From positions 309,486 to 373,485 of IMG/VR virus record IMGVR_UViG_3300042558_004148: a DNA stretch of 64,000 nt; one strand, written 5' to 3'. Below the pieces are notes generated by a model. The model worked only from the letters and a program-made list of their open reading frames with translations. It had not been told where the DNA came from and did no database searches. A program made the position numbers and the translations under genes. Shown here one piece after another: positions 21,882 through 35,381 of this stretch (position 1 is the first letter of the stretch; the number at the start of each line of letters is the position of its first letter).

Positions 21882-21890
21882 CAAATGAAT

Positions 21891-21977: not shown

Positions 21978-21982
21978 CACAT

Positions 21983-22055: not shown

Positions 22056-22070
22056 CTAATAAATAAAAAT

Positions 22071-22142: not shown

Positions 22143-22160
22143 CTAATTAATAACTTGCTT

Positions 22161-22583: not shown

Positions 22584-22588
22584 TACAT

Positions 22589-22663
22589 GGTGGCCGTAGT
22601 TCAGTTGGTTAGAACGTCTGGTTGTGGTCCAGAAGGTCGTCGGTTCGATCCCGACCGGTCACC
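22589..22663 (+). tRNA. tRNA-His(GTG)
   Basis: G-1; TCTGG-TTGTGGT-CCAGA; C73. Confidence 0.95.
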
Positions 22664-22794
22664 CTTTTTTATTACTAAGATTATGGCTTTTATTAAGATC
22701 CATCAAAGGTTTTGAATTAGTTTAGATTCTCAGGGCTAATATAGTCGACGATTCGAAATCAACTTTAGAATATATAATTATAAAAATAAAATTT

Positions 22795-23478
22795 ATGTGG
22801 AATGAAACCGAGTCTATTCTTGCTAAAAAATTACTAGAGGATGGAAAAAAATATAGAGAAATATCAGAAGTAATAGGTAAAAGTTACAATTCAATTAAAA
22901 ACCATCTTTTGAAAAAATATGGAATAAATCAATCTCAATTCGACAACTTAAGAAATATCGATATTCTAATTTGCCTTTGTTGTGGAGATGAGTTCGATAA
23001 TGAGAAATCTGGCAAGACAAGAAAATATTGCTCAGTGACGTGTTCAAATATAAGTAGAGGGAAAAAAAATCTAAAAAATTGTCCGATCTGTTTTAATACA
23101 GTAGATAAAGAAAAAAGAACCAAATACTGTTCACCAGAATGTCATAGTAAATCTATAACAAAAATAAATCAGGAAAAATTAGACGGCGGGATTTTTACTG
23201 ATTCAAACAGAAAAACTATTAAGAAGTTTTTAATATTAAAAAGAGGACACTGCTGTGAAATTTGTAAAAATGAAAGTTGGAATGGCGTAAATATACCATT
23301 AATATTGGATCACATTGACGGAAATCCCCAAAATAACCTAGAAAATAATTTTAGGTTGATTTGTCCAAATTGTGACGCACTAACACCAACTTATATGGGG
23401 AGAAATATAAAAAATATAAAAAGAAAACCCCGACAAAGAGATTTAGATAGGGATATAAAAATACAGAAGAATTCGTGA
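22795..23478 (+). CDS. free-standing HNH endonuclease with an N-terminal HTH and Zn-finger modules
   Basis: CEIC...LILDHIDGNPQNNLENNFRLICPNCDA; YCSVTC and YCSPEC; GAATATATA at 22768. Confidence 0.9.
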   Translation: MWNETESILAKKLLEDGKKYREISEVIGKSYNSIKNHLLKKYGINQSQFDNLRNIDILICLCCGDEFDNEKSGKTRKYCSVTCSNISRGKKNLKNCPICFNTVDKEKRTKYCSPECHSKSITKINQEKLDGGIFTDSNRKTIKKFLILKRGHCCEICKNESWNGVNIPLILDHIDGNPQNNLENNFRLICPNCDALTPTYMGRNIKNIKRKPRQRDLDRDIKIQKNS

Positions 23479-23495
23479 TTATGATCGGATCAATT

Positions 23496-23576
23496 GCTTG
23501 AGTGGTGGAATTAGGTAGACACGCTAGATTTAGGATCTAGTGCTTCGGCGTGAGGGTTCGATTCCCTCCTTGAGTA
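23496..23576 (+). tRNA. tRNA-Leu(TAG) copy 2
   Basis: CTAGA-TTTAGGA-TCTAG. Confidence 0.92.
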
Positions 23577-23581
23577 CAAAT

Positions 23582-23667
23582 GCCCCGGTGGTGAAACTGG
23601 TAGACACGCTGGACTTAAAATTCAGTGGGCCGTAAGGTCCGTGCGGGTTCGACTCCCGCCCGGGGTA
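23582..23667 (+). tRNA. tRNA-Leu(TAA)
   Basis: CTGGA-CTTAAAA-TTCAG. Confidence 0.93.
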
Positions 23668-23672
23668 CAATT

Positions 23673-23758
23673 GGAGAGTGATCCGTGATGGCGATCGGGT
23701 CCGCCTGCTAAGCGTGACGTACGGGAAACCGTATGAGGTTCGATTCCTCCGCTCTCCG
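23673..23758 (+). tRNA. tRNA-Ser(GCT)
   Basis: CGC-CTGCTAA-GCG; long variable arm; GGAGAG/CTCTCC-G. Confidence 0.82.
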
Positions 23759-23784
23759 CTTTTAATTAAAAAAATTAGATATTA

Positions 23785-23816
23785 TTTTTATTACCCGTGA
23801 AACATTATTATATTTG
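23785..23816 (+). promoter_or_regulatory. class-1 promoter for tRNA array C
   Basis: TTTTTATTACCCG-11nt-TATATTTG. Confidence 0.75.
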
Positions 23817-23863
23817 CAGAGTAATAAAAATAACATATAATAAACAGTTCATTGAAAATATAT

Positions 23864-23936
23864 CGTGGGGTAGAGCAGTAGGTAGCTCATTGGGCTCATA
23901 ACCCAAAGGTCGTCGGTTCGAGTCCGGCCCCCGCTA
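23864..23936 (+). tRNA. initiator tRNA-fMet(CAT) copy 1
   Basis: Unpaired 1:72; GGG/CCC in the anticodon stem. Confidence 0.92.
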
Positions 23937-23941
23937 CTAAA

Positions 23942-24089
23942 GGTTGCGAAAGCTATAGGTCAGTATGTAATGCTGATTGGCCAATGGATTAATGATGATT
24001 TAGTATTACTGCCCGAGATACCGGTTAAGCAGCATGGTAAGTGACTAAGTAAGTAATTGATATAGTAGGTTCGATTCCTACCGTGACCA
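23942..24089 (+). ncRNA. 148-nt tRNA-like RNA (acceptor and T arm only)
   Basis: GGTTGCG/CGTGACC-A; GTAGG-TTCGATT-CCTAC. Confidence 0.65.
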
Positions 24090-24094
24090 CATAT

Positions 24095-24167
24095 TGCGGA
24101 GTAGAGCAGTTGGTAGCTCAGTGGGCTCATAACCCAAAGGTCGCAGGTTCGAGTCCTGCCTCCGCTA
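24095..24167 (+). tRNA. initiator tRNA-fMet(CAT) copy 2
   Basis: TGCGGAG/CTCCGCT; GGG-CTCATAA-CCC. Confidence 0.9.
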
Positions 24168-24356
24168 CGAGTCGCTTTTAGTTATCCCTGTAGAAGATAG
24201 AGGTTTGGGTAGTGAAGTAAACCAGTGGAATTCTACAACTTTAAAAGTTTGTGTGACAAAGTAAGGTCTAATTTTCCTGACAAGGGGGCTTCCCGACGAA
24301 AAATAGAAGCTCAACTAATTAAGTAGAATCTGAATCGCTCAATTCAGATTCGAAAC

Positions 24357-24457
24357 GGTCCGGTGGTGAAGTTGGTAAACACTAAGGTGGATGTATTCGA
24401 AGGCCAAGAATAACTAACATCTACTAGGCGTCGCAGGTTCGAATCCTGCCCGGTCCA
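24357..24457 (+). ncRNA. 101-nt tRNA-like RNA with an elongated anticodon arm
   Basis: GGTCCGG/CCGGTCC-A; GTG-AAGTTGGTAAA-CAC; GTGGATGT/ACATCTAC; GCAGG-TTCGAAT-CCTGC. Confidence 0.7.
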
Positions 24458-24507
24458 CAAATCTCAAGATTAATTACCTTGAGGCTGTCAGGTTCGAAAC
24501 TGACGAT

Positions 24508-24611
24508 TGGCTATAGTGTATTGGAGCACAGCAGAACGGAGTACAAGAATAGTGCTTAGCACTCACGGAAAGGGGACGCAGGTTTAAGGTTCGAATCCTT
24601 ATTAGTCACCA
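24508..24611 (+). ncRNA. 104-nt tRNA-like RNA with an expanded anticodon region, ending ACCA
   Basis: TGGCTA/TAGTCA; GTG-TATTGGAG-CAC; TAAGG-TTCGAAT-CCTTA. Confidence 0.65.
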
Positions 24612-24735
24612 AATTTAAAAGTACACCGGAACGCTCTGATTTGTCGAAAGACTTTTCAACGACGGTACGAGGCAGTCTCTGTTTATTCGCGGTACAGAGA
24701 AAGAGAGGTTCATCCCGCTGCGTCCTCGTTATAAT

Positions 24736-24807
24736 GGTCCTGTAGTTAAACGGCTATAATGCTGCCCTGTCACGGCAGAGTTCGGAGTTCGATTCTCCGT
24801 GGGACCG
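24736..24807 (+). tRNA. tRNA-Asp(GTC)
   Basis: CTGCC-CTGTCAC-GGCAG. Confidence 0.95.
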
Positions 24808-24809
24808 CA

Positions 24810-24951
24810 AAAAGATAATGGTTCTTTCTACGTAGGTTGTCGACAAACCGAAATAGGTAAAAAAAGTTCACCACCCCTTGTGCCTGGATCCAGTAAAACT
24901 CAGGAAAGCACTTAAGATTGGAGCGAGAAGGGTACTCCATCATTATCTTTT
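24810..24951 (+). ncRNA. putative 142-nt structured RNA
   Basis: AAAAGATAATG/CATTATCTTTT closing helix; GTGC-CTG...CAG-GAAA-GCAC. Confidence 0.45.
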
Positions 24952-24956
24952 TAACC

Positions 24957-25043
24957 GGAGGAGTCGCATAGTGGTTTAGTGCACCGGTCTTGAAAACCGG
25001 CGATCCTGAAAGGGGTCCGTGAGTTCGAATCTCACCTCCTCCG
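24957..25043 (+). tRNA. tRNA-Ser(TGA) copy 2
   Basis: CCGGT-CTTGAAA-ACCGG. Confidence 0.95.
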
Positions 25044-25047
25044 CAAA

Positions 25048-25342
25048 GGGTAAGAGATACCCTCCATGTTTAGATCTCATTAAAGGATCTCGGTTAATGT
25101 CCAGGTGGTAACCGAAAGCTGGTTTGGAAAGCAATCATCTCATGGGTGGTAATGAGTCAAATTAGTTAAAATACTGGAACTGAGAACAAAGGCAGGTAGC
25201 AGAGCCTCTCAGTAGCTTGACAGGTTTTTATGTGGTAAGACACTAATGAAAAGCTTCGCATGGCTCGTACCCATGGGAGTGATGGTTCTCGAAACAGCTA
25301 GAGTAACCCGTTAAAATCTAGCTTAGCACATCTCACTAAGTG
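25048..25342 (+). ncRNA. putative ~295-nt structured RNA
   Basis: Several hairpins (CTCAT/ATGAG, CTGAGA/TCTCAG, AGCTAGA/TCTAGCT, CTTAG/CTAAG); no long ORF; richer in GC than the coding background. Confidence 0.45.
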
Positions 25343-25347
25343 AACAT

Positions 25348-25419
25348 GGCCCGTTCGACTATCGGTTAGGTCGTCAGGTTTTCATCCTGGAAAGAGGGGT
25401 TCGATTCCCCTACGGGCTA
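25348..25419 (+). tRNA. tRNA-Glu(TTC)
   Basis: TCAGG-TTTTCAT-CCTGG. Confidence 0.95.
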
Positions 25420-25489
25420 CTATGTGTTAGATACTGTAATATTTAACACAGAGCCAATGAAAGTGATTTACAGATTGCTTGAATTGGTT

Positions 25490-25558
25490 GAAGCTTTCGT
25501 CTAGCGTTCTAGGACTCCGCGTGTAGCGGGAACATCGGTTAGAATCCGATATGCTTTA
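25490..25558 (+). pseudogene. tRNA pseudogene or tRNA-like element with a shortened anticodon loop
   Basis: GTC-TAGCGTTCTAG-GAC; CCGC-GTGTA-GCGG; ATCGG-TTAGAAT-CCGAT. Confidence 0.5.
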
Positions 25559-25567
25559 CTAAACATT

Positions 25568-25603
25568 TAAAAGTCGGTACATTTAAAAGTATCGACTTTT
25601 TTT
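25568..25603 (+). terminator. terminator closing the tRNA region
   Basis: AAAAGTCGGTAC-ATTTAAAA-GTATCGACTTTT plus T run. Confidence 0.8.
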
Positions 25604-25667
25604 GTGGCCTAAAAAAGAGCAATTTCAGATAAATATTCCGAACCAAAATAAACCAAAATAAACATCT

Positions 25668-27569
25668 ATGAAAAAATTACTCATTCTCATTTTTGGAATC
25701 CTGCTGATACCATATCTAGGATTCTCACAATGTCCAACAGCTCCGGGAAATGGAGTCTATGTTATGGTCAATTCACAATATCAGGTAGGTACTGTAGCAT
25801 CAGGAAAAACCAATATAGGTCTATGTTATCAAAACACGACATCTACCTTGATCACCGGTTTGCAATACAGAGTTTGGTATGATAAGAATGCATTCGGCGG
25901 TGGAGCTCCTATAGTAACATCAACAAATACATCATTTGCACAGGTACTTCAATACGAGAATAATCTATCGGAAGGTAGCATTACAGTAACTATCGTTTAC
26001 ACTGGTAGTAGTAGCACTTTTACTATTCCATCAGGTGCATTATTTAATATAGAATTACAACATTCAGCAAACTTTCAAACCTTCACTAATAATATAACTA
26101 ATATTGAGGTAACTGGAACAACAACATTCAATAATCTAAGCTCAAATATAGATGGTCTTGATGATCTATTAACCCTTCATAATTACGGTGGGGTTATTAA
26201 TTCTGTAATGTTTAATTACCAGGGTAACTTTGTTAACGTTACCGGATCGCCAGCTAAGAATCTAACTCTTGCTCTAGAGAAGAAACCTAAAACCGGATCG
26301 ACTTGGTCTATAGATGAGATTGACACTACTGATCTTAATGGTGAATTCAATTTTTCAAAATCGATAGACACCACATACTATGACGTTAGACTTGCAGTTC
26401 AGGGTGATACATTATCAGTAGGTAATATAGTTACTGTGGCCGATGCGCAAAGAGTTAATCAATATGTTCTTGGACAACTTCAACCATCCGGATTTGATTA
26501 TTATTCTTCCGATGTAAATAATTCAGGTAACATTACAATGTCGGACGTTTACGGAATATATGGTAGAATAGCGGGAAGATTTAGTGCTTGGCCAAATAAC
26601 GTACCTGACATCAGATTCTTTAGTGCTTCCGAATATGCATCGATCAATGGATCTTCAACAAATCAGACACAATCAATACCAGGGGTAACTAATCTAACGT
26701 TCGATATATTACCAGGCCAACCAGATTCGGTCACATTTTATGTACTTGGATATGGAGATGCCAATGGTACAGGATATAACATGGCTCGTTTAGTTCCGAT
26801 AACTATTATAAATCCGAACAACACACCAAATTATATAATGGACGTGACAACGCAATATGATGACACTACATTGTCTACGATTGAAATTAACATGCCTAAG
26901 GTGACTGTAGATGAAGCAAATCTTGTAACGATACCTGTTACATTAAAATCTAATTCAGGTCCAATAGGATCGCTACAAATGGCATTATACTACGATCCAT
27001 CTTTATTAGAATTTAAGGAAATAGTTAATAGTGAAAAATCAATGGATTGGATGAGTTTCGTTAATCCAGTTGAAAATACGATCGAATGGGGAGGATTTGA
27101 TATCTCAGGAAATCAACATCCAATAAATGATGGTGAAAACCTATTTAATCTTAAGTTTCTTGCACTTGAACCACAGTCAGATTGGAATGCTAGTCCATTA
27201 TGGGTAACAAGGAAATATGCGGGTAATTCTATTGCAACTGATCTGATCATAAATCCAACCCACGGTGAAGTTAAAATAATGAATATCTCATCAGGCTACT
27301 TAAATCTACTCGGTAACAAGATAATAGTATATCCAAATCCAGTAGACGATAAAATAATGGTTGCTTTTGAGGTTTCAGAGAAAGAAAATATAACACTATC
27401 GATTTACGATATAAACGGAAAACTTGTAGTTGATTTAATGAAAACTAATATGCCAAAGGGAAAATATCAGTACACTTATGATATTGGTGAACTATCAGCT
27501 GGTTTATATGTTGCAACATTAAATATCAAAGCAAGCCAAATAGCGACAGCTAAAATAATTAAAAAGTAA
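25668..27569 (+). CDS. secreted cohesin-like / Ig-like / dockerin-like / cohesin protein with a T9SS type-A C-terminal sorting domain
   Basis: Signal peptide; ITGLQYRVWYDKNAF; SDVNNSGNITMSDV; VTIPVTL...GSLQMALYYDPSLLEF; VYPNP...LSIYDINGKLV...AGLYVATL...KIIKK. Confidence 0.85.
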   Translation: MKKLLILIFGILLIPYLGFSQCPTAPGNGVYVMVNSQYQVGTVASGKTNIGLCYQNTTSTLITGLQYRVWYDKNAFGGGAPIVTSTNTSFAQVLQYENNLSEGSITVTIVYTGSSSTFTIPSGALFNIELQHSANFQTFTNNITNIEVTGTTTFNNLSSNIDGLDDLLTLHNYGGVINSVMFNYQGNFVNVTGSPAKNLTLALEKKPKTGSTWSIDEIDTTDLNGEFNFSKSIDTTYYDVRLAVQGDTLSVGNIVTVADAQRVNQYVLGQLQPSGFDYYSSDVNNSGNITMSDVYGIYGRIAGRFSAWPNNVPDIRFFSASEYASINGSSTNQTQSIPGVTNLTFDILPGQPDSVTFYVLGYGDANGTGYNMARLVPITIINPNNTPNYIMDVTTQYDDTTLSTIEINMPKVTVDEANLVTIPVTLKSNSGPIGSLQMALYYDPSLLEFKEIVNSEKSMDWMSFVNPVENTIEWGGFDISGNQHPINDGENLFNLKFLALEPQSDWNASPLWVTRKYAGNSIATDLIINPTHGEVKIMNISSGYLNLLGNKIIVYPNPVDDKIMVAFEVSEKENITLSIYDINGKLVVDLMKTNMPKGKYQYTYDIGELSAGLYVATLNIKASQIATAKIIKK

Positions 27570-27583
27570 AAAAAAGTAAAAAA

Positions 27584-27916
27584 ATGTCAGAAGAAACAAA
27601 CAACGTTGAGACCAACGATGGTACTTGGTCGGGATTAAAGAAAACCATAATCGGTACTCTAACAACTGTTATCGCAGGTGGTGGGGTTTGGATTTCTACA
27701 CTATTATTCGGCGGAAACGAGGATAAGGAAGAAACTAAAACCGAGCAGGTAGCTCCGGCTCCAGTTGTAGTTAACGTACAGCAAAACCAGGAAAACACTC
27801 AGAAACAACAAAACAATGGTGGAACACACACTATTATCAAAGAACGTGTTGTAGAAAAACCTGTTGAAAAGAAAGAGGAAAAGAAAAAGGACGAATCAAC
27901 TGATGCTCCTTGGTAA
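27584..27916 (+). CDS. small single-TM membrane protein
   Basis: TIIGTLTTVIAGGGVWISTLLFGG followed by a charged low-complexity tail. Confidence 0.75.
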   Translation: MSEETNNVETNDGTWSGLKKTIIGTLTTVIAGGGVWISTLLFGGNEDKEETKTEQVAPAPVVVNVQQNQENTQKQQNNGGTHTIIKERVVEKPVEKKEEKKKDESTDAPW

Positions 27917-27934
27917 TTAAAATAAATTAAATTT

Positions 27935-28285
27935 ATGTCATTAAAAAAATCACTAGGCTTTGGTAAAGAAGATCTGACTAAAGTGGCAGACAACAATAGA
28001 TTCTATCATATGCTTCAGCAGATGCAATCTAATAGATGGAGAATTACTGCTATAGTACTTGGATTATTTACATTAATAATAGTTGGTATCAATGCAGGAG
28101 TTTTTCTTGGAGCTACTATTAACGAGGACTGGAAAGAAATGTTACTTATACTATTAGGTGCTTTTGTTGGTAATCTAAATAAAGTTGTTGATTATTGGTT
28201 TAACTCTGAAGACAGGGATAAAATGCTCATCCAGAAGGTGGATGAAGAAGATGGTGTTGCTTTATCTAACACTATAGAAAAATAA
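27935..28285 (+). CDS. two-TM membrane protein (holin-like topology)
   Basis: ITAIVLGLFTLIIVGINAGVFLG; MLLILLGAFVGNLNKVVDYWF. Confidence 0.75.
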   Translation: MSLKKSLGFGKEDLTKVADNNRFYHMLQQMQSNRWRITAIVLGLFTLIIVGINAGVFLGATINEDWKEMLLILLGAFVGNLNKVVDYWFNSEDRDKMLIQKVDEEDGVALSNTIEK

Positions 28286-28296
28286 TAAAATTAAAA

Positions 28297-28530
28297 ATGA
28301 AAAAGTTTTTTAGCCAAATTTTCCAAGATGAAAAGGGAAATTATTCATCCAACAGATTTGTTGGTATCATGTGTGCAGTTTCACTTTGTGTTACAATGTA
28401 TCACAATTCATTCTCAACTGAGGATGTAGCACCAGCTCCAGCACTAATTAATGCAGTTGCAGCTCTTGCTTTTGGTGCACTTGGTTTAGGTGCAGCTAAT
28501 AAGATCTTCTCTAAGAAGAAAGAAGATTAA
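28297..28530 (+). CDS. small two-TM membrane protein
   Basis: SSNRFVGIMCAVSLCV; ALINAVAALAFGALGLGAA. Confidence 0.75.
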   Translation: MKKFFSQIFQDEKGNYSSNRFVGIMCAVSLCVTMYHNSFSTEDVAPAPALINAVAALAFGALGLGAANKIFSKKKED

Positions 28531-28546
28531 TTAAAATTAAATTTAT

Positions 28547-29266
28547 ATGAGATTCTCACTAATACTACTATCTTTAATTCTTGCTACTTCAAGTATTTAT
28601 GCACAGCCGGGTTCAGTAAAAACTGAACAGTATCAAGCTGAGTTTGAAAAGAAGCAATCAATAGATGTTGTAGCTGAATATACGGACACAATAAAAATAC
28701 CAATACAAATATTAAAGATTGGTATTAGTGAGGAACTCTATGAATTTTATCCGGAATTAAAAGATAAGAGAGTCGGCCTTGGTGTAACCAATATAGTTTT
28801 AGAATATCTTGAGATGACAAACAGATTTGTGTTCACTGAGGATAAGTTGGAGATTAAGGAAAGGATGATCCAGCAATTTAAGGCTTCGGATAAGGGGTTT
28901 ACTGAAAATAAAATGGACGGCAGAGGAAAAATTAAGTTAGCTAAATATTTTGTTTATATAGAGGTTTATGACTTTTCGGTATCTGATGATGAGGTTCTTA
29001 AATTGAACGGAGAATCTAAAACAACACAAGTAACAAGATTAGGACTTCAAGTTAAATTTGTAGATTCCGAAACTGGTGAGGTCTTAATGGGATCTGGATT
29101 AGGTGAGGCAACTACAATTAAAACAGCATCAATATTGGATGGCGTTGATGATAGTGATATTAAATTCAACCAATCCACAATAGGAACAACAACAAAAAAA
29201 TCACTAGAGACAGCTTCCTCAAGAATAGTATCTAGAATGATCAAAAAAGGAATTTTTAAATCGTAA
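28547..29266 (+). CDS. CsgG/HfaB-like exported protein
   Basis: Signal peptide; GLGVTNIVLEYL...RFVFTE; YFVYIEVYDFSV; LGLQVKFVDSETGEV...GLGEA. Confidence 0.7.
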   Translation: MRFSLILLSLILATSSIYAQPGSVKTEQYQAEFEKKQSIDVVAEYTDTIKIPIQILKIGISEELYEFYPELKDKRVGLGVTNIVLEYLEMTNRFVFTEDKLEIKERMIQQFKASDKGFTENKMDGRGKIKLAKYFVYIEVYDFSVSDDEVLKLNGESKTTQVTRLGLQVKFVDSETGEVLMGSGLGEATTIKTASILDGVDDSDIKFNQSTIGTTTKKSLETASSRIVSRMIKKGIFKS

Positions 29267-30850
29267 ATGTATGCTAAAACCATATCAACATTATTTCTTA
29301 TTCTCGCATTCAATGTAATTGGATATGGGCAAACATTCACGTATTCTTATACCGATCCATGTACAGGGTCAATAAAATCTCTACAGGTTCCTTCCAATGG
29401 GATCACAGTTAATTATTACGGAGAAATCCAAACATTCCAGCCAATAGATTTTTATAATGGCGGATTTGAAACATGGACACAAAATGTTTATTCCAATTAT
29501 GGGGGGAACAATCCATGCGCAACTATAGTTGGCTTATCGTCAACAGTTAATATTGCACAGAACACCGCTATAAATTTTATAGGTATAGTTAATTCATTAT
29601 CTGCACTTAGCGATATGGCTGCTACTGCAGGATCAACTAATATATTATCCGGCGTGGGGAGTGTACAGAATTCATCAAATGGTGGGAACAATAAAGGTAA
29701 GAATAAACAAACAGGATCTGGAGGAACAACAGGATCTGGTGGTTCTCAAAATCAGGGAGGTAATAATGGAAACAACAGCAGCAATAACGGAAATAGTAAT
29801 GCTAACGGTAGTAATAATACCGGGGGCTCTACAGCTACTAACGGGTCTACGCAATCTAATGACCAAACAACAGGATCTGGAGGAACAACAGGATCTGGAG
29901 GAACAACAGGATCTGGAGGAACAACAGGATCTGGAGGAACAACAGGATCTGGAGGAACAACAGGATCTGGAGGAACAACAGGATCAGGTCAGACAGGCAC
30001 TTCAAGCGGATCAAGTGGATCTACTGGTCAGAATAGCAGCAATACTAATGGGAGCGGGGGTTCCACAGAAGGAGGCAATGGAAAAAGCGAATCTACTACT
30101 ACCACAGAAACCCCTACAGAAAGCGAAGGAAAAACGAATATAGTTGGTGGATCTGTTGCTTCAGTACAAAATTCAACAAACAGCGGTGGCTCACCGTCTA
30201 ATAAAAATGGAAACAGACCAACGATATTAGCCAGTAGTGATTTTGTTGGATTCAATTTCAAGGATTCGGATGTAACCGCAGGTGGTAAAGTAACGGGAGG
30301 TTATACCTCGATGAGATGGGATGGTGCAAGATCATGGGGAATTAATGCAGATTATACAACAGCTATAAAAGGGCCAAACATAACAGGATTCTATGCTTTC
30401 ATTAAAAAGAAAAGAATAGATCTTATATCAGGTACAGTAACATTAGGATTCGATAGAAGATCATCATTGTATGGTACATTAGCTCTTGGTCAAATGTGGA
30501 ATATAGGCAAACGTGGTAAATTTAAAGCAGTTTATATGCTAACTGGATCTTACGGTAATGTATATGGTGAGGAATTTGTAGGTACTGCAGCAATAGCTGG
30601 TACCATGTATGATTTTAAAGTTTCAAAGAGAATAGACATTAAACTTCTGGGATTATATGTTTATGCTCCTTATGTTAGTTATTATAACGATATACTATTA
30701 AAATCACCGCACGTGGTTTTACCTATAGTTGGTACTAATGTAAGTTTAAGTAAGAGATTTAAACTTAACGTAAACTGTGGAGGTGCATGGGCTCTTAATG
30801 AGAATGCACTTAATTATACCATAATGCTAGGAACAAGAATGTTATTATGA
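29267..30850 (+). CDS. exported protein with a Gly/Ser/Thr/Asn linker and a predicted beta-barrel C-terminus
   Basis: Signal peptide; GSGGTT repeats; alternating hydrophobic strands ending YTIMLGTRMLL. Confidence 0.7.
   Translation: MYAKTISTLFLILAFNVIGYGQTFTYSYTDPCTGSIKSLQVPSNGITVNYYGEIQTFQPIDFYNGGFETWTQNVYSNYGGNNPCATIVGLSSTVNIAQNTAINFIGIVNSLSALSDMAATAGSTNILSGVGSVQNSSNGGNNKGKNKQTGSGGTTGSGGSQNQGGNNGNNSSNNGNSNANGSNNTGGSTATNGSTQSNDQTTGSGGTTGSGGTTGSGGTTGSGGTTGSGGTTGSGGTTGSGQTGTSSGSSGSTGQNSSNTNGSGGSTEGGNGKSESTTTTETPTESEGKTNIVGGSVASVQNSTNSGGSPSNKNGNRPTILASSDFVGFNFKDSDVTAGGKVTGGYTSMRWDGARSWGINADYTTAIKGPNITGFYAFIKKKRIDLISGTVTLGFDRRSSLYGTLALGQMWNIGKRGKFKAVYMLTGSYGNVYGEEFVGTAAIAGTMYDFKVSKRIDIKLLGLYVYAPYVSYYNDILLKSPHVVLPIVGTNVSLSKRFKLNVNCGGAWALNENALNYTIMLGTRMLL
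29870..29977 (+). repeat. 6 x 18-nt perfect tandem repeat ACAGGATCTGGAGGAACA (TGSGGT)
   Basis: Read directly; a further copy near 29710. Confidence 0.95.
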
Positions 30851-32520
30851 GAAAGTTTATAACCAGTCTAATCGTAATTCTGATAACATGTGCTACTTAT
30901 GCGCAAACGTTTTCCTATTCGGGATACATCTATAACGCGAATGGTACAGGAGCAGTAAATGTTCCAGTAAAGCTATATAAAAGAACAACCCCAACTTTAA
31001 CCGGATTTACCTCACAAACTAATTACAATGGTCACTCATATTATCGTTCAACAGGTTCTATGACATGGACTGCTGCTAAAACTGCTTGTGAAAATATGGG
31101 TGGACATCTTGCTACAGTTTCAAATGCAGCTGAGAATAATTTTCTCTTTAATACATGGCCATCAGGTTGGATTGGATATTATCAAGATAAAGTTGCTGGA
31201 TATACTTATTCTGAACCTTTAGGTGGATATCGATGGACAGAAACTCAAGTAACTGCAAATAGAGTAGCAGATTATGACGTTTCATCATATTCTTCAGGTT
31301 CGACCCTAGTTGATATCAAAGGAGGATTTAATGCTACTTTATACAATTCACCGACATATACAAGTACTGGTGGTAAGTATCTAAGCTTCAATGGAGCTAA
31401 TCAATATGCAATAACCGGAAACTTGGCTTCGGCAATGGGAAATACCAATCACATCACTTTGTTTGCTTGGGTTTATCCTACAGGGAATGGCGTTATTGTT
31501 AACGAACTAGGAACTGGAAGTCCTACATCCGGTTGGCATGAATCTGTTATAGAAATTACTGGAGGAAACACATTGAGAGTTGGATTTTGGACAGGAATTG
31601 GAATTCAACAATTAAGTACTACTATTACACTTAATGCTTGGCATTTAGTAGCAATAACTTATAATGGAACAACCATGAAAGGTTATTTAGATAATGTTAA
31701 TTTCGGATCTGTTAATTTTCAGAGAGAAGCTGCACATTTATATTCAGGAAATGGAGAATTTTTTGGAATAGGATTGACTGAAACTACTAATATGGGAAGT
31801 GGTGCTTATGGATCTTTTAGATTAGGAGATTTTCAAGTTTTTAATAGAGCTTTAACTGCCGATGAATTAGATAGAACATACAATTTATATGCATATAGAT
31901 ACAAGCTAAATCAATATGTTAATTGGAATGGCGGAGAACCTAATAACTCAGGAAATGAAGATTACGCTCAATTCGTAGGTAATGGACAATGGAATGATCT
32001 ACCGAACACTACTCTCCCTTATGTAATTGAATTTGATTATATCAACGATTTTACTCCTTGGGCTTTATATCAAACGGTCTATACAAATTCTAATGGATAT
32101 TATTCTTTTAGTCAATCAACGAATCCTGCAACTGAATGGTATATAAAAGTTGATGCACCTACTCCAATTACTACTCACCAAACATCAGATTTAAGTTCAA
32201 TAGGCAATATTGTAATTGGAACAACCACAAGAAAATCTATACATTGGAATATGTTTGACGTAAACAATGATGGCAAAATTACAATATCCGATTCATATTA
32301 TGTTTGGGGAAAGAAAAACGGGATATTTCCTAGCTGGATTGGATCTCAACCATCCTCACTTTATACTGTTTCCCAATTTAACTCATTGAATTCAGGAACA
32401 GTAAATTTAAAATCAATCTACCCCGGAGTAAGTTCATTTACGATATCCACCCCGGTCAGTGGGGGGTCTACAAATTATTATCTAATCGCTCCTGGATTTT
32501 CGGGACAGGTAACATATTAA
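30847..32520 (+). CDS. secreted C-type lectin with an inserted LamG domain and a C-terminal dockerin-like motif
   Basis: GHSYYRS...TWTAAKTACENMGGHLATV; WNGGEPNNSGNEDY...GQWNDL; LGDFQVFNRALT; DVNNDGKITISDS. Confidence 0.85.
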   Translation: MRKFITSLIVILITCATYAQTFSYSGYIYNANGTGAVNVPVKLYKRTTPTLTGFTSQTNYNGHSYYRSTGSMTWTAAKTACENMGGHLATVSNAAENNFLFNTWPSGWIGYYQDKVAGYTYSEPLGGYRWTETQVTANRVADYDVSSYSSGSTLVDIKGGFNATLYNSPTYTSTGGKYLSFNGANQYAITGNLASAMGNTNHITLFAWVYPTGNGVIVNELGTGSPTSGWHESVIEITGGNTLRVGFWTGIGIQQLSTTITLNAWHLVAITYNGTTMKGYLDNVNFGSVNFQREAAHLYSGNGEFFGIGLTETTNMGSGAYGSFRLGDFQVFNRALTADELDRTYNLYAYRYKLNQYVNWNGGEPNNSGNEDYAQFVGNGQWNDLPNTTLPYVIEFDYINDFTPWALYQTVYTNSNGYYSFSQSTNPATEWYIKVDAPTPITTHQTSDLSSIGNIVIGTTTRKSIHWNMFDVNNDGKITISDSYYVWGKKNGIFPSWIGSQPSSLYTVSQFNSLNSGTVNLKSIYPGVSSFTISTPVSGGSTNYYLIAPGFSGQVTY

Positions 32521-32542
32521 ATAAAAAATAAAATACTAACTA

Positions 32543-32998
32543 ATGAGAAATTTATTATTTTTACTACTTCTGATGCCAGTTATGGCATTTACACAAACAG
32601 AAATATGTGTTAAGATTGATTCGGTTTATTCTACTGCTAAATTAAGGGAGATGGGAAATAGAGATATCAGATTTGGTATCCAACAAATAGCTGAGGATAT
32701 ATTATCCGAAAAATATTGTCTTTCAGAAAAAGGAAATCCTATGGAAATAGAGGTTTATTATTTCGGTATACCTAAAAAATCATTAAGGATAGCAGGCATG
32801 GAAAAAACCAATCAAATAACACAGGTTGGTATTAGAATATATTACAATGGGATTAAATACGAGGGTCTGGGTGAATCAGATACCGAGGTTAGAGCAGTAA
32901 TGATAGAACTGGTTGATGGACAAGTACCATTCTCTAAGATGACAGTATCGAATGCTATAAAAAAAGCAATAATAGATGCTGTAAACAAGATAGAATAA
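32543..32998 (+). CDS. exported protein, distant paralog of the CsgG-like ORF at 28547
   Basis: RFGIQQIAEDIL vs GLGVTNIVLEYL; EGLGES vs GSGLGEA; FSKMTVSNAIKKAI vs FNQSTIGTTTKKSL. Confidence 0.6.
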   Translation: MRNLLFLLLLMPVMAFTQTEICVKIDSVYSTAKLREMGNRDIRFGIQQIAEDILSEKYCLSEKGNPMEIEVYYFGIPKKSLRIAGMEKTNQITQVGIRIYYNGIKYEGLGESDTEVRAVMIELVDGQVPFSKMTVSNAIKKAIIDAVNKIE

Positions 32999-33033: not shown

Positions 33034-33708
33034 ATGGCTTATCGAATAATATTAAGAAGAGACACCACTCAAAATTGGGAATCTAATAATCCCGTATTAC
33101 TTTCGGGCGAACCTGGGTATGAAACGGACACTGGAATACTAAGAGTCGGTGATGGACTAACAACTTGGAAGGATCTAAATCCATATTATGGTGTTACAGG
33201 ACCGATTGGTGTTACAGGTTCCACTGGAGCTACTGGAGCAATGGGAGTTACTGGAGCTACTGGACCTTCAGGAGGACCGGTTGGAGCTACTGGACCGGTT
33301 GGAGCTACTGGAGCAATAGGAGCTACTGGAGCAATAGGAGCTACTGGAGCAATAGGAGCTACTGGAGAAGTTGGAGCTACTGGAGCAATAGGAGCTACTG
33401 GAGCAATAGGAGCTACTGGAGCAATAGGAGCTACTGGAGCAATAGGAGCTACTGGAGCAATAGGAGCTACTGGAGCAATAGGAGCTACTGGAGCAATAGG
33501 AGCTACTGGAGCAATAGGAGCTACTGGAGAAGTTGGAGCTACTGGAGAAGTTGGAGCTACTGGAGCAATAGGAGCTACTGGAGCAATAGGAGCTACTGGA
33601 GCATCTATAGAATTTTCTTCTACTCAACCTGGCAATACTGCTTCGCCCTCCACATGGGGAGAAATAACGATAGGAGCTACAGCATATTACATACCTCTGT
33701 ATTTATAA
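33034..33708 (+). CDS. Mtd_N/hyaluronidase-N-like domain plus a collagen-like (GATGAI)n fibre
   Basis: [38 protein letters not shown]; GATATATA at 33003. Confidence 0.85.
33301..33603 (+). repeat. about 16 x 18-nt repeat GGAGCTACTGGAGCAATA (variant ...GAAGTT)
   Basis: Read directly. Confidence 0.95.
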
Positions 33709-33724
33709 TATAATTAGAAACCAG

Positions 33725-33753
33725 AAAAACCCGATATTATATGTCGGGTTTTT
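33725..33753 (+). terminator. intrinsic terminator
   Basis: AAAAACCCGATAT-TAT-ATGTCGGGTTTTT. Confidence 0.8.
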
Positions 33754-33821
33754 CGTGTTTCTAATTTAAGTATATGTTAATATGGATATATACTTAATCA
33801 TAAATAAAATACATCAAAAAG

Positions 33822-35381
33822 ATGCCTTATAGAATATTACTTAGAAGAGATAACGCATTAAGCTGGGCATATAATGACCCGGTTTTAATGACAGGTGAAC
33901 CTGGATACGAAACAGATACCAATAAATTTAAAATCGGAGACGGACAGGCACCTTGGTCGCAATTGCCATATTATTCTGGAGTAACTGGAGGTACCGGTCC
34001 GATCGGACCCATTGGTATAACAGGAGCTACGGGTGCTAATGGATCTAGCGGTACCTCAGGTAGTTCTGGTACTAGCGGTACTAGCGGTACTAACGGTACT
34101 TCCGGAGTGAATGGTGCTGGATTAAGTTCTAAATCTGGAACCGTTTCATCTGGTGATACCGGATGGGTTGGTCCTGTCTATGATGTTGTCTTCGCTCAGT
34201 CATTCGGGTCTACAAATTATTCCATTTCTGTTGATGTTACAAATAGTGGTCCAATAACAATAACAAATAAGACCTCTTCCGGGTTTAGAGTTGCGACGGG
34301 GATGTTTGCCGAGAATTTTGATTGGATTGCGATTGCTAATGGTGAAAGTGTGGTACCAAGTTCAAGTGGCACATCAGGTTCAAGCGGTACCTCAGGTTCA
34401 AGCGGTACATCAGGTTCATCGGGAACTGCTGGTACTAGTGGTACTTCAGGAACTAATGGATCTTCAGGTACTGATGGATCATCTGGAACTAATGGATCAT
34501 CGGGAACTAATGGTACCTCAGGCACAGACGGAACTTCAGGAACATCTGGTACTAGTGGAAGTAGTGGAACATCAGGAAGCAGTGGAAGCAGTGGAACTAA
34601 TGGAAGCAGTGGAACTAATGGAAGTAGCGGGGTTTCACCTGGATATAATCCAATCCCATATAAATACGAAAATGCAGGGGATGTAACTATAAACAGTGAC
34701 GGGACGGATCCATTAAATACCGGAAGAATGATAGGGTCCGGTATTACATATACTCCATCCAGTATAGGAACTATTGGCATCTCATTTTCATTTGGTGTAA
34801 ATATCACATCAGATTTTGTACCTCTTGATAATTATGCATTCTCTATACGATATGGGACTGGAACACCTCCAATAACTAGTGATCAATTAACAGGAACACC
34901 GATAGCTACCCAAATATACGAAACATTCAATGGACAGTCCGCAGTAACTAATATGTATATAAATTCGGTACTTACCGGATTAACTATAGGTACAGATTAC
35001 TGGTTTGATTTATCAGTAACTTCAACAGAACAGAATCCACCAACAGCAAGATTCAATGGTTCGAATATAACATGTAGTATATTGGAATTAAGTGGTGGAA
35101 TTGGAGCAACTGGTCCTATTGGTGGATCAGGTACCGGAGCAAATATATATTACGGTGACCAAACAATAACATCAGGAAATAAGGTAATTGTAAATACCAT
35201 AGAGGTATATTCAGGCAATATATTAACACTTAATTCACCTATAGTGGATGTACCAGCAATATTTAAAATCTCCGATTATTCAGCTCTTAACTTTACTGAT
35301 GATATAGGTGCCTCCGCAGGTGGTGTACCAACAGGAGGTATCTATCATAATGCTGGAGCAGTAAGGATAAGATTAACTTAA
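33822..35381 (+). CDS. Mtd_N-like fibre protein with GTSGSS repeats
   Basis: [30 protein letters not shown]; GATATATA at 33785. Confidence 0.85.
   Translation: MPYRILLRRDNALSWAYNDPVLMTGEPGYETDTNKFKIGDGQAPWSQLPYYSGVTGGTGPIGPIGITGATGANGSSGTSGSSGTSGTSGTNGTSGVNGAGLSSKSGTVSSGDTGWVGPVYDVVFAQSFGSTNYSISVDVTNSGPITITNKTSSGFRVATGMFAENFDWIAIANGESVVPSSSGTSGSSGTSGSSGTSGSSGTAGTSGTSGTNGSSGTDGSSGTNGSSGTNGTSGTDGTSGTSGTSGSSGTSGSSGSSGTNGSSGTNGSSGVSPGYNPIPYKYENAGDVTINSDGTDPLNTGRMIGSGITYTPSSIGTIGISFSFGVNITSDFVPLDNYAFSIRYGTGTPPITSDQLTGTPIATQIYETFNGQSAVTNMYINSVLTGLTIGTDYWFDLSVTSTEQNPPTARFNGSNITCSILELSGGIGATGPIGGSGTGANIYYGDQTITSGNKVIVNTIEVYSGNILTLNSPIVDVPAIFKISDYSALNFTDDIGASAGGVPTGGIYHNAGAVRIRLT

What the first reader, a model, noticed from the sequence alone, without database searches (positions are those of the whole stretch)
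25668..32998. Phage-encoded cell-envelope export module: T9SS-secreted cohesin scaffold, dockerin-lectin, CsgG-like pair, barrel and small membrane proteins
Seen: eight co-oriented, tightly packed genes. Five carry N-terminal signal peptides and three are small membrane proteins. The first has cohesin-like domains, a dockerin-like Ca loop and a type-A T9SS CTD. The 30847 protein has a dockerin-like motif but no CTD. Established: the CTD routes proteins through the Bacteroidota T9SS; cohesin-dockerin pairs build cellulosome-type complexes; CsgG is an outer-membrane channel. Inference: the phage builds a lectin-displaying complex on or outside the infected cell, using the host T9SS and possibly its own CsgG-like channel. 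Possible roles are superinfection exclusion, receptor masking, aggregation of hosts or grazer defence. Signal peptides argue against a role in the virion. I know of no characterised system like this.
Basis: partly seen in the sequence, partly recalled or inferred. Interest (0 to 1): 0.88.

Follow-up and report, generated by a model that had tools for sequence, protein, structure and literature searches.

The report
Phage operon for host-envelope lectin complex
A large Flavobacterium-type phage carries a conserved eight-gene operon of exported proteins (a secreted scaffold, a sugar-binding lectin and an outer-membrane trio) that most likely re-dresses the envelope of the infected cell; what it achieves has not been tested.

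Summary
Window 25668-32998 has eight co-oriented genes with gaps of -4 to 22 nt, set between two terminator-like hairpins. Five products have signal peptides that end in a conserved Gln, and three are small membrane proteins.

- **g1:** carries a cohesin and a type-A T9SS C-terminal domain (CTD), both above Pfam and NCBIfam cut-offs, plus a dockerin-like module.
- **g7:** a C-type lectin with intact EPN/WND sugar-binding motifs and an inserted LamG domain. It has the same dockerin-like module as g1 and no CTD.
- **g5 and g8:** paralogs. The g5 model matches CsgG best, but I found no membrane hairpins, so a channel is not supported.
- **g6:** an N-terminal domain, a disordered linker and a predicted 12-stranded outer-membrane barrel.

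The cassette is syntenic in 49 viral contigs and in cultured Flavobacterium phage immuto, where it lies among replication genes. Only the lectin slot varies. Bacteria of several other phyla carry a trio built like g5-g6-g8.

The best reading is an envelope or surface complex exported partly through the host T9SS. Its purpose (receptor masking, superinfection exclusion or adhesion) is inferred, not shown. It is a new variant of phage host-surface modules.

The parts
25569..25604 (+). Terminator-like hairpin with a T-run that closes the upstream tRNA island. It marks the 5' boundary of the operon.
   Evidence: RNAfold gives -15.6 kcal/mol with a 12-bp stem. The consensus scan missed it because the loop has 8 or more bases.
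25668..27569 (+). g1 (633 aa), the T9SS-cargo scaffold. Residues 1-21 are the signal peptide and 22-172 an N-terminal domain. Residues 173-378 are a beta-sandwich plus dockerin-like module, with the Ca-loop DVNNSGNITMSD at 282-293 (nt 26511-26546). Residues 399-543 are the cohesin (nt 26862-27296) and 550-633 the type-A CTD (nt 27315-27566).
   Evidence: Pfam and NCBIfam. The family profile matches dockerin 4uyp_B (E 5e-4), T9SS CTD 8glj_D and cohesin 6kg8 in the PDB. More than 1430 metagenomic clusters match g1 (E <= 1e-5); all 120 best listed carry Por_Secre_tail, most also Cohesin, and three carry Dockerin_1.
27584..27916 (+). g2 (110 aa), a core single-pass inner-membrane protein. It has an acidic N-terminus, one membrane segment, a conserved periplasmic tail and an invariant C-terminal Trp.
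   Evidence: Present in 47 loci; the alignment shows conserved motifs. Library matches are weak only.
27935..28285 (+). g3 (116 aa), an accessory membrane protein with two membrane segments. It is about 80% identical wherever it occurs.
   Evidence: Found in 18 loci, 14 of them unique sequences. SLATT matches are weak and below cut-off.
28297..28530 (+). g4 (77 aa), an accessory membrane protein with two membrane segments and a charged C-terminus.
   Evidence: It lies inside the cassette only in the window's own clones. Copies 42-53% identical lie elsewhere in L017 and L019.
28547..29266 (+). g5 (239 aa), an exported protein with a CsgG/LpoB-type fold and the most conserved gene of the cassette. 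The window copy has no lipobox.
   Evidence: AF2 pLDDT 73.7. Foldseek best matches are CsgG 4uv2/4uv3, E 5e-8, TM 0.53-0.57. Remote relatives carry Pfam CsgG. 21 of 33 phage homologues have a lipobox, and the hairpin tip is polar.
29267..30850 (+). g6 (527 aa). Residues 23-120 form an N-terminal domain with two invariant Cys (nt 29333-29626). Residues 121-314 are a hypervariable Gly/Ser/Thr/Asn linker (nt 29627-30208). Residues 319-526 form a 12-stranded barrel (nt 30221-30844).
   Evidence: Alignment A5. AF2 model with barrel pLDDT mostly 70-89. Foldseek matches EstA, NalP, BrkA, NanC, KdgM, Tsx and FapF. None of the 87 homologues carries a Pfam domain.
30847..32520 (+). g7 (557 aa), the variable glycan-binding subunit. 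The C-type lectin is split into residues 58-132 and 357-400, with EPN at 364 and WND at 382. A LamG domain is inserted at 183-341. The C-terminal beta-sandwich plus dockerin-like module spans 403-552, with the Ca-loop DVNNDGKITISD at 471-482 (nt 32257-32292). There is no CTD.
   Evidence: Pfam. Comparison with the uninterrupted lectin of immuto gp013. EPN and WND are kept in 23 of 28 unique slot proteins. Slot diversity. The C-terminal module is homologous to g1 residues 196-361 (E 2e-32).
32543..32998 (+). g8 (151 aa), a small exported paralog of g5 with an invariant Cys just after the signal peptide.
   Evidence: hhalign A1 against A2 gives probability 96.5%, E 9e-10. Present in every locus that reaches the far end of the cassette (39 ORFs recovered).
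33724..33754 (+). Strong terminator-like hairpin (14-bp stem) after the next gene, a collagen-like fibre gene at 33034-33708. It is the likely 3' end of the transcription unit.
   Evidence: Inside the cassette, only two weak 6-bp candidates were found on the + strand.

Best explanation
This is a conserved, co-transcribed accessory operon of a clade of large phages of Flavobacterium-like Bacteroidota. Its products are exported into the envelope of the infected cell, where they assemble a glycan-binding complex.

**Shown**
- All five larger proteins have Bacteroidota-style Sec signal peptides.
- g1 carries a type-A T9SS sorting domain, a cohesin and a dockerin-like module.
- g7 carries the same dockerin-like module fused to a C-type lectin with intact Ca/sugar-binding motifs, and it occupies the one slot of the cassette that swaps heads between phages.
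- g5 and g8 are paralogous proteins with a CsgG/LpoB-type fold. g5 is a lipoprotein in most lineages.
- g6 is a predicted 12-stranded outer-membrane barrel with a tethered N-terminal domain.
- g2 is a conserved inner-membrane protein.

**Inferred**
- g1 is taken across the outer membrane by the host T9SS.
- g7 binds g1 through a cohesin-dockerin contact, either in the periplasm (so that it rides out with g1) or after release.
- g5, g6 and g8 form an outer-membrane platform that anchors or assists the complex rather than acting as a curli-type channel.
- The displayed lectin binds host-type surface glycans. My preferred purpose is to mask receptors, so that infected cells and debris stop taking up superinfecting phages or progeny. 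Sticking cells together or to particles is nearly as likely.
For: - **Operon structure:**
- **Export signals:** the Gln at the end of each signal peptide is invariant or nearly so. From memory, this fits the Bacteroidetes 'Q-rule' for signal peptidase I substrates.
- **g1 domains:** CTD and cohesin score above cut-offs. The dockerin is supported by a profile match to 4uyp_B (E 5e-4) and by Pfam Dockerin_1 in three family members.
- **Shared module:** the g1 and g7 modules are homologous.
- **Fusion/split:** immuto gp014 (dockerin module, no CTD) and gp015 (cohesin + CTD) are fused as g1 here.
- **Lectin:** EPN and WND are kept in 23 of 28 unique slot proteins. Heads vary between C-type lectin, lectin+LamG, lectin+Ig_7 and GEVED.
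- **g5, g8 and g6:** fold and paralogy of g5/g8; g6 barrel.
- **Linkage:** the genes stay together in 49 viral contigs even where their order is permuted, as in immuto, L053 and L068.
- **Non-virion setting:**
- **Host:** immuto infects Flavobacterium, a genus with a T9SS (established knowledge).
- **Why surface changes would matter:** Flavobacterium phage resistance maps to gliding and T9SS-linked genes (PMC9804748, title seen).
Against: - No experiment or expression data exist for any member of the cassette.
- The Dockerin_1 matches in the window proteins fall below Pfam's cut-off, and only one canonical Ca-loop per module is visible.
- g7 has no CTD and no lipobox, so nothing known takes it past the periplasm. 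Riding out with g1 is speculation.
- A 12-stranded barrel and a CsgG-fold protein without membrane hairpins could not pass a folded lectin.
- The role of g5, g6 and g8 is unknown. A trio of the same architecture occurs in phyla outside Bacteroidota (Spirochaetia, KSB1, Cloacimonadota; T9SS status not checked), so its function need not involve the T9SS.
- The cassette has no catalytic or obviously receptor-blocking part.
- The purpose rests on analogy alone.
Confidence: 0.5

Rival explanations
1. The complex acts inside the periplasm. g5, g6, g8 and g2 form a platform on the inner face of the outer membrane or across the envelope. The g7 lectin binds periplasmic glycans, such as O-glycosylated envelope proteins, peptidoglycan or polysaccharide in transit. 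The CTD of g1 serves to engage or jam the host T9SS rather than to deliver a surface coat. The effect would be host takeover: switching off gliding or secretion, removing receptors, or stabilising the envelope.
For: - g7, g5, g8 and immuto gp014 have signal peptides but no CTD or surface-export signal.
- Distant g5 relatives are periplasmic domains of Ser/Thr kinases and caspase lipoproteins.
- The g5 hairpin is polar.
- The g6 N-terminal domain has two invariant Cys 52 residues apart. From what I know of autotransporters, that spacing argues against threading the domain through its own barrel.
- The lipobox-bearing g5 homologues have no acidic residues after the Cys. From memory, such residues mark surface-exposed Bacteroidota lipoproteins.
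Against: - A well-conserved type-A CTD is most simply read as a real export signal.
- Variable lectin heads fit diverse external glycans better.
- I know of no precedent for a cargo that jams the T9SS.
Confidence: 0.2
2. The cassette is an auxiliary adhesion or nutrient-capture module. The secreted scaffold and lectin, joined in many relatives by a secreted nuclease, bind polysaccharides or particles and release nutrients that support the large phage's replication. It would resemble the T9SS-secreted glycoside hydrolases reported in 'Cryophage'.
For: - Phage-encoded T9SS cargo with glycan-active domains has been reported (PMC7468147).
- A signal-peptide-bearing Endonuclease_NS gene lies between g7 and g8 in 17 loci and next to the cassette in immuto.
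- Cohesin-dockerin systems classically organise polysaccharide utilisation.
Against: - The window's cassette has no catalytic domain and no nuclease.
- A lytic phage gains little from slow extracellular foraging.
- This reading gives no role to the outer-membrane trio or to g2.
Confidence: 0.12
3. The cassette is a lysis or egress accessory. The small membrane proteins g3 and g4 would act like holins. g2 (inner membrane) and g5 (outer-membrane lipoprotein) would act like a spanin pair, with g6 and g8 helping to breach the outer membrane.
For: - g3 and g4 have two membrane segments each, and g4 has a charged C-terminus.
- g2 gives a weak match to a 'hol-like' PHROG (E 0.002).
- The g2 plus g5 topology resembles inner- and outer-membrane spanins.
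- In L053 a variant cassette follows a gene whose N-terminus looks by eye like a peptidoglycan-binding domain (not scanned), together with small membrane proteins.
Against: - g3 and g4 are absent from most loci.
- No endolysin is adjacent in the window or in immuto, where the endolysin lies about 6 kb beyond gp019.
- A lectin, a cohesin, a dockerin and a CTD have no known role in lysis.
- g5 is a 239-aa folded protein, unlike outer-membrane spanins.
Confidence: 0.06
4. The proteins are virion components, such as decoration or fibre proteins with Ig-like and lectin domains, and the N-terminal hydrophobic segments are not signal peptides.
For: - g7 matches a PHROG named 'virion structural protein' through its LamG domain.
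- In the window, collagen-like fibre genes follow the cassette directly.
Against: - Five signal peptides with a conserved cleavage-site Gln, a T9SS CTD, lipoboxes and an outer-membrane barrel all point to the envelope.
- The fibre-gene neighbour is not conserved.
- In immuto the cassette lies among replication genes.
Confidence: 0.03

Closest known systems
Type-A CTD cargo of the Bacteroidota type IX secretion system, including the phage-encoded cargo of 'Cryophage' (PMC7468147)
   Same: g1 has a Sec signal peptide and a C-terminal Por_Secre_tail / TIGR04183 domain above cut-offs. A phage borrowing the host T9SS has been proposed before.
   Different: The cargo here is a non-enzymatic cohesin/dockerin scaffold. 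It sits in a fixed multi-gene cassette with an outer-membrane trio and is conserved across a large phage clade, whereas the Cryophage cargo genes are variable single genes.
Cellulosome-type cohesin-dockerin assemblies, including the X-module plus type II dockerin arrangement
   Same: There is a cohesin above Pfam's cut-off. The dockerin-like module has a Ca-loop of the DxNxDGxIxxxD type and is preceded by a beta-sandwich. One protein has cohesin plus dockerin and another has dockerin plus a functional head.
   Different: No enzymes are attached. Only one canonical Ca-loop is visible. The Dockerin_1 scores are below cut-off. The host is Gram-negative and export is through the T9SS. Binding has not been tested.
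CsgG (curli channel) and its fold relatives LpoB, PelC, GNA1162, FlgT and LptE
   Same: The g5 model aligns to CsgG over its full length (E 5e-8). Remote relatives hit Pfam CsgG and LpoB and are named CsgG/HfaB family. Most homologues have a lipobox. g5 is paired with an outer-membrane barrel, as PelC is with PelB and LptE with LptD.
   Different: g5 itself gives no Pfam CsgG hit. I found no amphipathic membrane hairpins. The window copy is not a lipoprotein. There are no CsgE, CsgF or CsgA partners. g8 is a shortened paralog.
12-stranded outer-membrane barrels with an N-terminal domain and linker: FapF and type Va autotransporters (EstA, NalP, BrkA)
   Same: The g6 C-terminal domain is predicted as a 12-stranded barrel. 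Its N-terminal domain, long flexible linker and barrel are laid out like FapF or an autotransporter.
   Different: There is no detectable sequence homology. The linker is a hypervariable Gly/Ser/Thr/Asn tract with no predicted plug helix. The conserved disulfide-type Cys pair argues against autotransport. The C-terminus does not end in an aromatic residue.
Phage-encoded envelope proteins for superinfection exclusion or receptor masking (such as the T5 Llp lipoprotein), and the 'Host-interface island' of Flavobacterium jumbophages (bioRxiv 10.64898/2026.04.22.720137)
   Same: These are accessory, non-virion phage genes that encode secreted and lipoprotein products thought to remodel the host surface.
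   Different: The known examples are single small proteins. The 'Host-interface island' is described as having acyl-carrier proteins and a phosphohydrolase, which are absent here. Whether it overlaps this cassette could not be checked.

Membership tests
T9SS type-A cargo | N-terminal Sec signal peptide | tested here: met
   The g1 N-terminus has a Lys pair, a hydrophobic stretch and FSQ. Gln21 is invariant in 19 homologues.
T9SS type-A cargo | C-terminal sorting domain matching PF18962 / TIGR04183 above the curated cut-off | tested here: met
   52.4 bits against 27 and 43.9 bits against 23, at residues 554-633. The family profile also matches solved CTD 8glj_D.
T9SS type-A cargo | T9SS-dependent secretion and removal of the CTD in a host that has a T9SS | not testable with these tools
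   The host of the cultured relative is Flavobacterium. Secretion itself needs an experiment.
Cohesin | Match to PF00963 above the gathering score | tested here: met
   35.8 bits against 24.1 at g1 residues 407-503. Precomputed in most of the 120 best family members listed. Weak PDB cohesin matches.
   hhalign of the N-terminal domain against the cohesin gives E 0.23. There is no Pfam hit.
Dockerin (type I-like) | Match to PF00404 above the gathering score | tested here: inconclusive
   g1 scores 19.4 and g7 scores 17.1 against a cut-off of 22.9. PF00404 is listed for three g1 homologues. The g1 family profile matches dockerin 4uyp_B at E 5e-4. The g7 module gives only E 0.014 to 2b59_B.
Dockerin (type I-like) | Two duplicated Ca-binding loop-helix segments | tested here: inconclusive
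   One canonical loop is present in each protein. The first segment is degenerate but conserved.
Dockerin (type I-like) | Ca-dependent binding to a cognate cohesin | not testable with these tools
A pull-down or a complex prediction is needed.
CsgG family (curli channel) | Sequence match to PF03783 | tested here: not met
   g5 and g8 give no hit at E <= 0.1. Only remote relatives reached through the g5 profile hit PF03783.
CsgG family (curli channel) | CsgG-type alpha/beta fold | tested here: met
   Foldseek E 5e-8, TM 0.53-0.57, about 230 aligned columns to 4uv2/4uv3. The model has pLDDT 73.7.
CsgG family (curli channel) | N-terminal lipidation (lipobox Cys) | tested here: not met
   The window g5 has no Cys in its signal peptide. 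21 of 33 unique phage homologues do.
CsgG family (curli channel) | Two amphipathic hairpins that build the membrane barrel | tested here: not met
   The one long hairpin tip (residues 144-165) is rich in charged residues and lacks an alternating hydrophobic face. The second hairpin is not predicted. This rests on sequence inspection only.
CsgG family (curli channel) | Nonameric channel with CsgE, CsgF and CsgA partners | not tested
   The oligomer was not modelled. The Pfam and PHROG scans of the cassette showed no curli partner genes.
12-stranded outer-membrane beta-barrel | Signal peptide plus a C-terminal domain that folds as a closed 12-stranded antiparallel barrel | tested here: met
   AF2 predicts 12 strands at residues 319-526 with pLDDT mostly 70-89. 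Foldseek matches NanC and KdgM (TM 0.66-0.71), NalP, EstA, Tsx and FapF.
12-stranded outer-membrane beta-barrel | C-terminal beta-signal ending in an aromatic residue | tested here: not met
   The family ends in ...TRMLL or ...LIGQ. The cellular counterparts end in ...RF.
C-type lectin (Ca-dependent sugar binding) | PF00059 match plus the EPN/QPD and WND motifs | tested here: met
   34.1 bits against 22.6. EPN is at residue 364 and WND at 382, and both are kept in 23 of 28 unique slot proteins. The meaning of the motifs is from established knowledge.
Holin / spanin lysis cassette | Adjacent endolysin, with small membrane proteins conserved alongside it | tested here: not met
   No endolysin is adjacent. 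g3 and g4 are absent from most loci.

The most novel reading that the evidence does not exclude
A clade of abundant freshwater and brackish Flavobacterium phages builds its own miniature cellulosome-like display system on the infected cell. In this reading, a cohesin-bearing scaffold exported by the host T9SS carries out dockerin-tagged, interchangeable lectins that have no secretion signal of their own for crossing the outer membrane. The complex would be anchored by a previously unrecognised three-protein outer-membrane machine: a pair of CsgG-fold lipoproteins and a tethered 12-stranded barrel. That machine also exists, uncharacterised, in several other bacterial phyla.
Probability: 0.25. 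Interest if true: 0.85.

Novelty: new variant of a known kind. Interest (0 to 1): 0.7.

Why it matters
- **Scale.** If the reading is right, phages of a major aquatic bacterial group routinely re-dress the surface of their hosts with a modular, swappable sugar-binding complex exported through the host's own secretion system. That would affect adsorption, superinfection, aggregation and particle attachment in freshwater carbon cycling.
- **Secretion biology.** It would be a natural test of whether the T9SS can carry a partner bound to a cargo protein.
- **A new bacterial system.** It points to a three-gene outer-membrane system (a CsgG-fold pair plus a tethered barrel) in diverse bacteria, for which I found no annotation beyond 'CsgG/HfaB family'.
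- **Abundance and tractability.** The g1 family has more than 1430 clusters at 90% identity. The cassette can be studied in a cultured pair, phage immuto and Flavobacterium sp. LMO8.

Tried and rejected
- **PDB sequence searches.** Profiles of g5 and g8 gave no meaningful match. The CsgG link came only from the fold and from remote relatives.
- **g1 N-terminal domain as a second cohesin.** hhalign gave E 0.23. Not supported.
- **Homology between g6 and the cellular 'middle' proteins.** hhalign gave probability 11-15%, E 0.002-0.003. I report this as the same architecture only.
- **Word-based search with the g6 barrel profile.** It found only phage-type relatives with no Pfam domain. The one distant hit, P0237, is another phage variant.
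- **More partners in the window.** I looked for further dockerin, cohesin or CTD proteins and found none beyond g1 and g7.
- **The module-associated secreted nuclease.** It is absent from the window.
- **Sigma-70 promoter scan.** No enrichment over shuffles, and the model does not suit Bacteroidota.
- **Megablast of 39-60 kb against cultured phages.** No match.
- **Pfam on cellular neighbours.** Nothing was found.
- **Literature.** I found no description of this cassette. The nearest are PMC7468147 and a 2026 preprint.

Full report
**1. What is in the window**

The window comes from a large phage. It has 32 tRNA genes at 9216-25420, about 34% G+C, and genes for a sigma factor, UvsX, DnaB, SbcCD and a Lon-like protease. 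It is identical across the cassette to IMG/VR contigs of 343-373 kb.

At 25668-32998 there are eight + strand ORFs with gaps of 14, 18, 11, 16, 0, -4 and 22 nt. A terminator-like hairpin at 25569-25604 (-15.6 kcal/mol) precedes them. The next strong + strand terminator, at 33724-33754, follows the adjacent collagen-like fibre gene. The eight genes, probably with that ninth, form one transcription unit.

**2. Export signals**

g1, g5, g6, g7 and g8 each begin with a basic residue, a hydrophobic stretch and a short motif ending in Gln. That Gln is invariant or nearly so in every family alignment. From memory, this fits the Bacteroidetes 'Q-rule', in which signal peptidase I substrates start with Gln. 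It argues that these are real signal peptides used in a Bacteroidota host.

g2 has one membrane segment, and g3 and g4 have two each.

**3. g1**

| Model | Score (bits) | Cut-off | Residues |
|---|---|---|---|
| Por_Secre_tail (PF18962) | 52.4 | 27 | 554-631 |
| TIGR04183 (type A) | 43.9 | 23 | 554-633 |
| Cohesin (PF00963) | 35.8 | 24.1 | 407-503 |
| Dockerin_1 (PF00404) | 19.4 | 22.9 | 255-294 |

- A profile of 19 homologues matches a solved dockerin (ScaB, 4uyp_B) over its whole length at E 5e-4. It also matches a solved T9SS CTD and cohesins.
- Three metagenomic homologues carry precomputed Pfam Dockerin_1.
- The loop DVNNSGNITMSD (residues 282-293) has the Asp, Asn and Asp positions invariant.
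- The N-terminal domain (residues 22-172) is conserved but not demonstrably a cohesin (hhalign E 0.23).
- The family is very common. More than 1430 clusters match at E <= 1e-5, and the 120 best listed are 598-670 aa long.

**4. g7**

- Lectin_C and Laminin_G_3 both score above cut-off.
- Comparison with the uninterrupted lectin of immuto gp013 shows that LamG (about residues 133-356) is inserted inside the lectin domain.
- The second lectin half keeps EPN (residue 364) and WND (residue 382). By established knowledge these mark Ca-dependent binding of mannose- or GlcNAc-type sugars. Both are kept in 23 of 28 unique proteins from this slot.
- The C-terminal 150 residues are homologous to g1 residues 196-361 (E 2e-32). 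They contain a near-canonical dockerin loop, DVNNDGKITISD.
- Matches of this module to solved structures are weak: EF-hands, and the X-module plus dockerin of CipA at E 0.014.
- No protein in this slot has a CTD.
- Across phages the head changes between lectin, lectin+LamG, lectin+Ig_7 and GEVED, while the docking module stays.

**5. g5 and g8**

- *No direct library match.* Neither protein matches Pfam, NCBIfam or PHROGs.
- *Paralogy.* They are paralogs (hhalign probability 96.5%, E 9e-10).
- *Remote relatives.* A g5 profile found 266 representatives among 1.84 billion proteins. Distant members carry Pfam CsgG and LpoB above cut-off. Others are fused to caspase domains or form the extracytoplasmic end of Ser/Thr kinases. 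One cluster is named CsgG/HfaB family by its sources.
- *Fold.* The AF2 model, built on a 40-sequence alignment with pLDDT 73.7, matches CsgG best (E 5e-8, TM 0.53-0.57). PelC, FlgT, GNA1162 and LptE follow. A phage protein annotated as CsgG is the best hit in the viral library.
- *Against a channel.* The long hairpin tip (residues 144-165) is charged. There is no second hairpin. The window's g5 lacks the lipobox that 21 of 33 phage homologues have. I therefore read g5 and g8 as periplasm-facing members of the CsgG/LpoB fold class, not as a curli-type channel.

**6. g6**

The alignment shows three parts:
- a conserved N-terminal domain with two invariant Cys;
- a hypervariable Gly/Ser/Thr/Asn linker, whose repeat number differs even between near-identical contigs (521 against 527 aa);
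- a conserved domain of about 210 residues at the C-terminus.

AF2 predicts 12 antiparallel strands at residues 319-526 with pLDDT mostly 70-89, and a disordered linker. Foldseek returns 12-stranded barrels: NanC and KdgM (TM 0.66-0.71), NalP, EstA, BrkA, Tsx and FapF. No relatives outside phage-type sequences were found, and none has a Pfam domain.

**7. Conservation**

- g5 homologues occur in 49 viral contigs. The order g1-g2-(g3)-g5-g6-[variable slot]-g8 is kept in every locus that is long enough.
- Cultured Flavobacterium phage vB_FspM_immuto has the same set in permuted order: gp013 lectin, gp014 (the N-terminal part of g1), gp015 (cohesin + CTD), gp016 (g2), gp017 (g5), gp018 (g6) and gp019 (g8). 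There it sits between ribonucleotide reductase and nuclease genes on one side and thioredoxin and QueC genes on the other.
- Other permutations occur in L053 and L068. Linkage that survives reshuffling argues for functional coupling.
- The split of g1 into gp014 and gp015 is a fusion/split pattern that links the dockerin-module protein to the cohesin+CTD protein.
- g3 occurs in 18 loci (14 distinct sequences). g4 lies inside the cassette only in the window's clones.
- In 17 loci a signal-peptide-bearing non-specific nuclease lies between g7 and g8. Immuto gp012 is the same gene. The window lacks it.

**8. Cellular counterparts**

Relatives of g5 at 25-36% identity occur in metagenome-assembled genomes of Ignavibacteriales, Rhodothermales, KSB1, Fibrobacterota, Spirochaetia, Cloacimonadota, Thermoanaerobaculia and others.
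- Most sit next to a second paralog that also matches the g8 profile.
- In about half of them a secreted protein of 350-415 aa lies next to the g5-like gene, flanked by the second paralog where the contig extends far enough. It has an N-terminal Cys-containing domain, an acidic linker and a C-terminal domain ending in ...RF.
- This mirrors g5-g6-g8. Homology of the middle proteins is not demonstrated and Pfam finds nothing in them.

**9. Reading**

- *Secure:* this is an accessory operon of envelope-targeted proteins, not virion genes.
- *Probable:* g1 leaves the cell through the host T9SS.
- *Plausible but untested:* g7, and in immuto gp014, docks on the cohesin. The outer-membrane trio anchors or assists the complex.
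- *Open:* how g7 would cross the outer membrane. Riding out with g1 is my inference, and a purely periplasmic role is the main rival.
- *Analogy only:* the purpose. Options are receptor masking or exclusion, adhesion or aggregation, and nutrient capture. Phage resistance in Flavobacterium maps to gliding and T9SS-linked genes (PMC9804748), which makes surface remodelling a sensible target.

**10. Prior work**

Phage-encoded T9SS cargo has been reported once, as variable single genes (PMC7468147). A 2026 preprint names a 'Host-interface island' of secreted and lipoprotein genes in Flavobacterium jumbophages, but with a different stated content. I found no description of this cassette.

Noticed in passing
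window 9216-25420: A tRNA island of 32 tRNA genes, including one with an undetermined anticodon at 20717-20787. It is interspersed with HNH/homing-endonuclease-like ORFs at 15326-15985 and 22795-23478.
   Followed up: partly
window about 25500-25560: A sequence with a T-arm-like motif (GGTTAGAATCC) lies between the last called tRNA and the hairpin at 25569-25604. It may be a tRNA remnant or a tRNA that ARAGORN missed.
   Followed up: no
window 33034-33708, 33822-35381 and 60508-61296: Three collagen-repeat 'tail-fibre-like' genes share a conserved N-terminal fibre/hyaluronidase-type domain of about 50 aa. The repeat length of the first differs between otherwise identical contigs (L047, L048). 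A strong terminator follows it at 33724-33754.
   Followed up: partly
window 29627-30208 (g6 linker); L048: The Gly/Ser/Thr/Asn linker of g6 contains tandem TGSGGT-type repeats. It is 6 aa shorter in the near-identical contig L048 and ranges widely in length across phages. This looks like a contingency-type hypervariable spacer.
   Followed up: partly
window 39134-51604: A run of + strand genes includes a glycosyltransferase (39931-40782) and a nucleotide-sugar epimerase (47695-48678). It may be a phage polysaccharide-modification cluster, and it could be functionally related to the lectin cassette.
   Followed up: no
window 35516-37582: A 688-aa Lon-like ATP-dependent protease (PHROG 4871, E 1e-242) lies directly downstream of the fibre genes.
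   Followed up: no
window 6558-7232 and 11916-12512: Two further ORFs have Bacteroidota-style signal peptides ending in YAQ, so the phage encodes other exported proteins. The first has a possible lipobox (LSC).
   Followed up: no
window 62001-64000: G+C rises to 0.45, against about 0.33 elsewhere, with long - strand ORFs at 62351-63631 and 62920-63975. I did not examine this region.
   Followed up: no
L020 13223-13804; 16 further loci; L001 8261-8839 (immuto gp012): A non-specific DNA/RNA endonuclease (Endonuclease_NS) with a signal peptide is inserted between the lectin gene and g8 in many related phages. It is absent from the window.
   Followed up: yes
L054-L067 (genomes of several phyla); P0095, P0098, P0104, P0120, P0143: Cellular relatives of g5 come as adjacent paralog pairs, often flanking a secreted protein with an N-terminal domain, a linker and a barrel-like C-terminus. 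This appears to be an uncharacterised outer-membrane trio. Other relatives are fused to caspase domains or form the periplasmic end of Ser/Thr kinases.
   Followed up: partly
L053 (Sediminibacterium MAG contig) 1918-7883: A variant cassette (g8-like, g1-like, g2, g5, g6-like) follows a gene whose N-terminus looks like a peptidoglycan-binding domain (judged by eye, not scanned) and several small membrane proteins. It is the only hint of a link to lysis genes.
   Followed up: no
L012, L040, L041, L043 (g3 homologues): Some g3 homologues carry a C-terminal extension of about 100 aa with acidic repeats and a Cys-rich motif (HRNC...ECQxCG). From the membrane topology it would be cytoplasmic.
   Followed up: no
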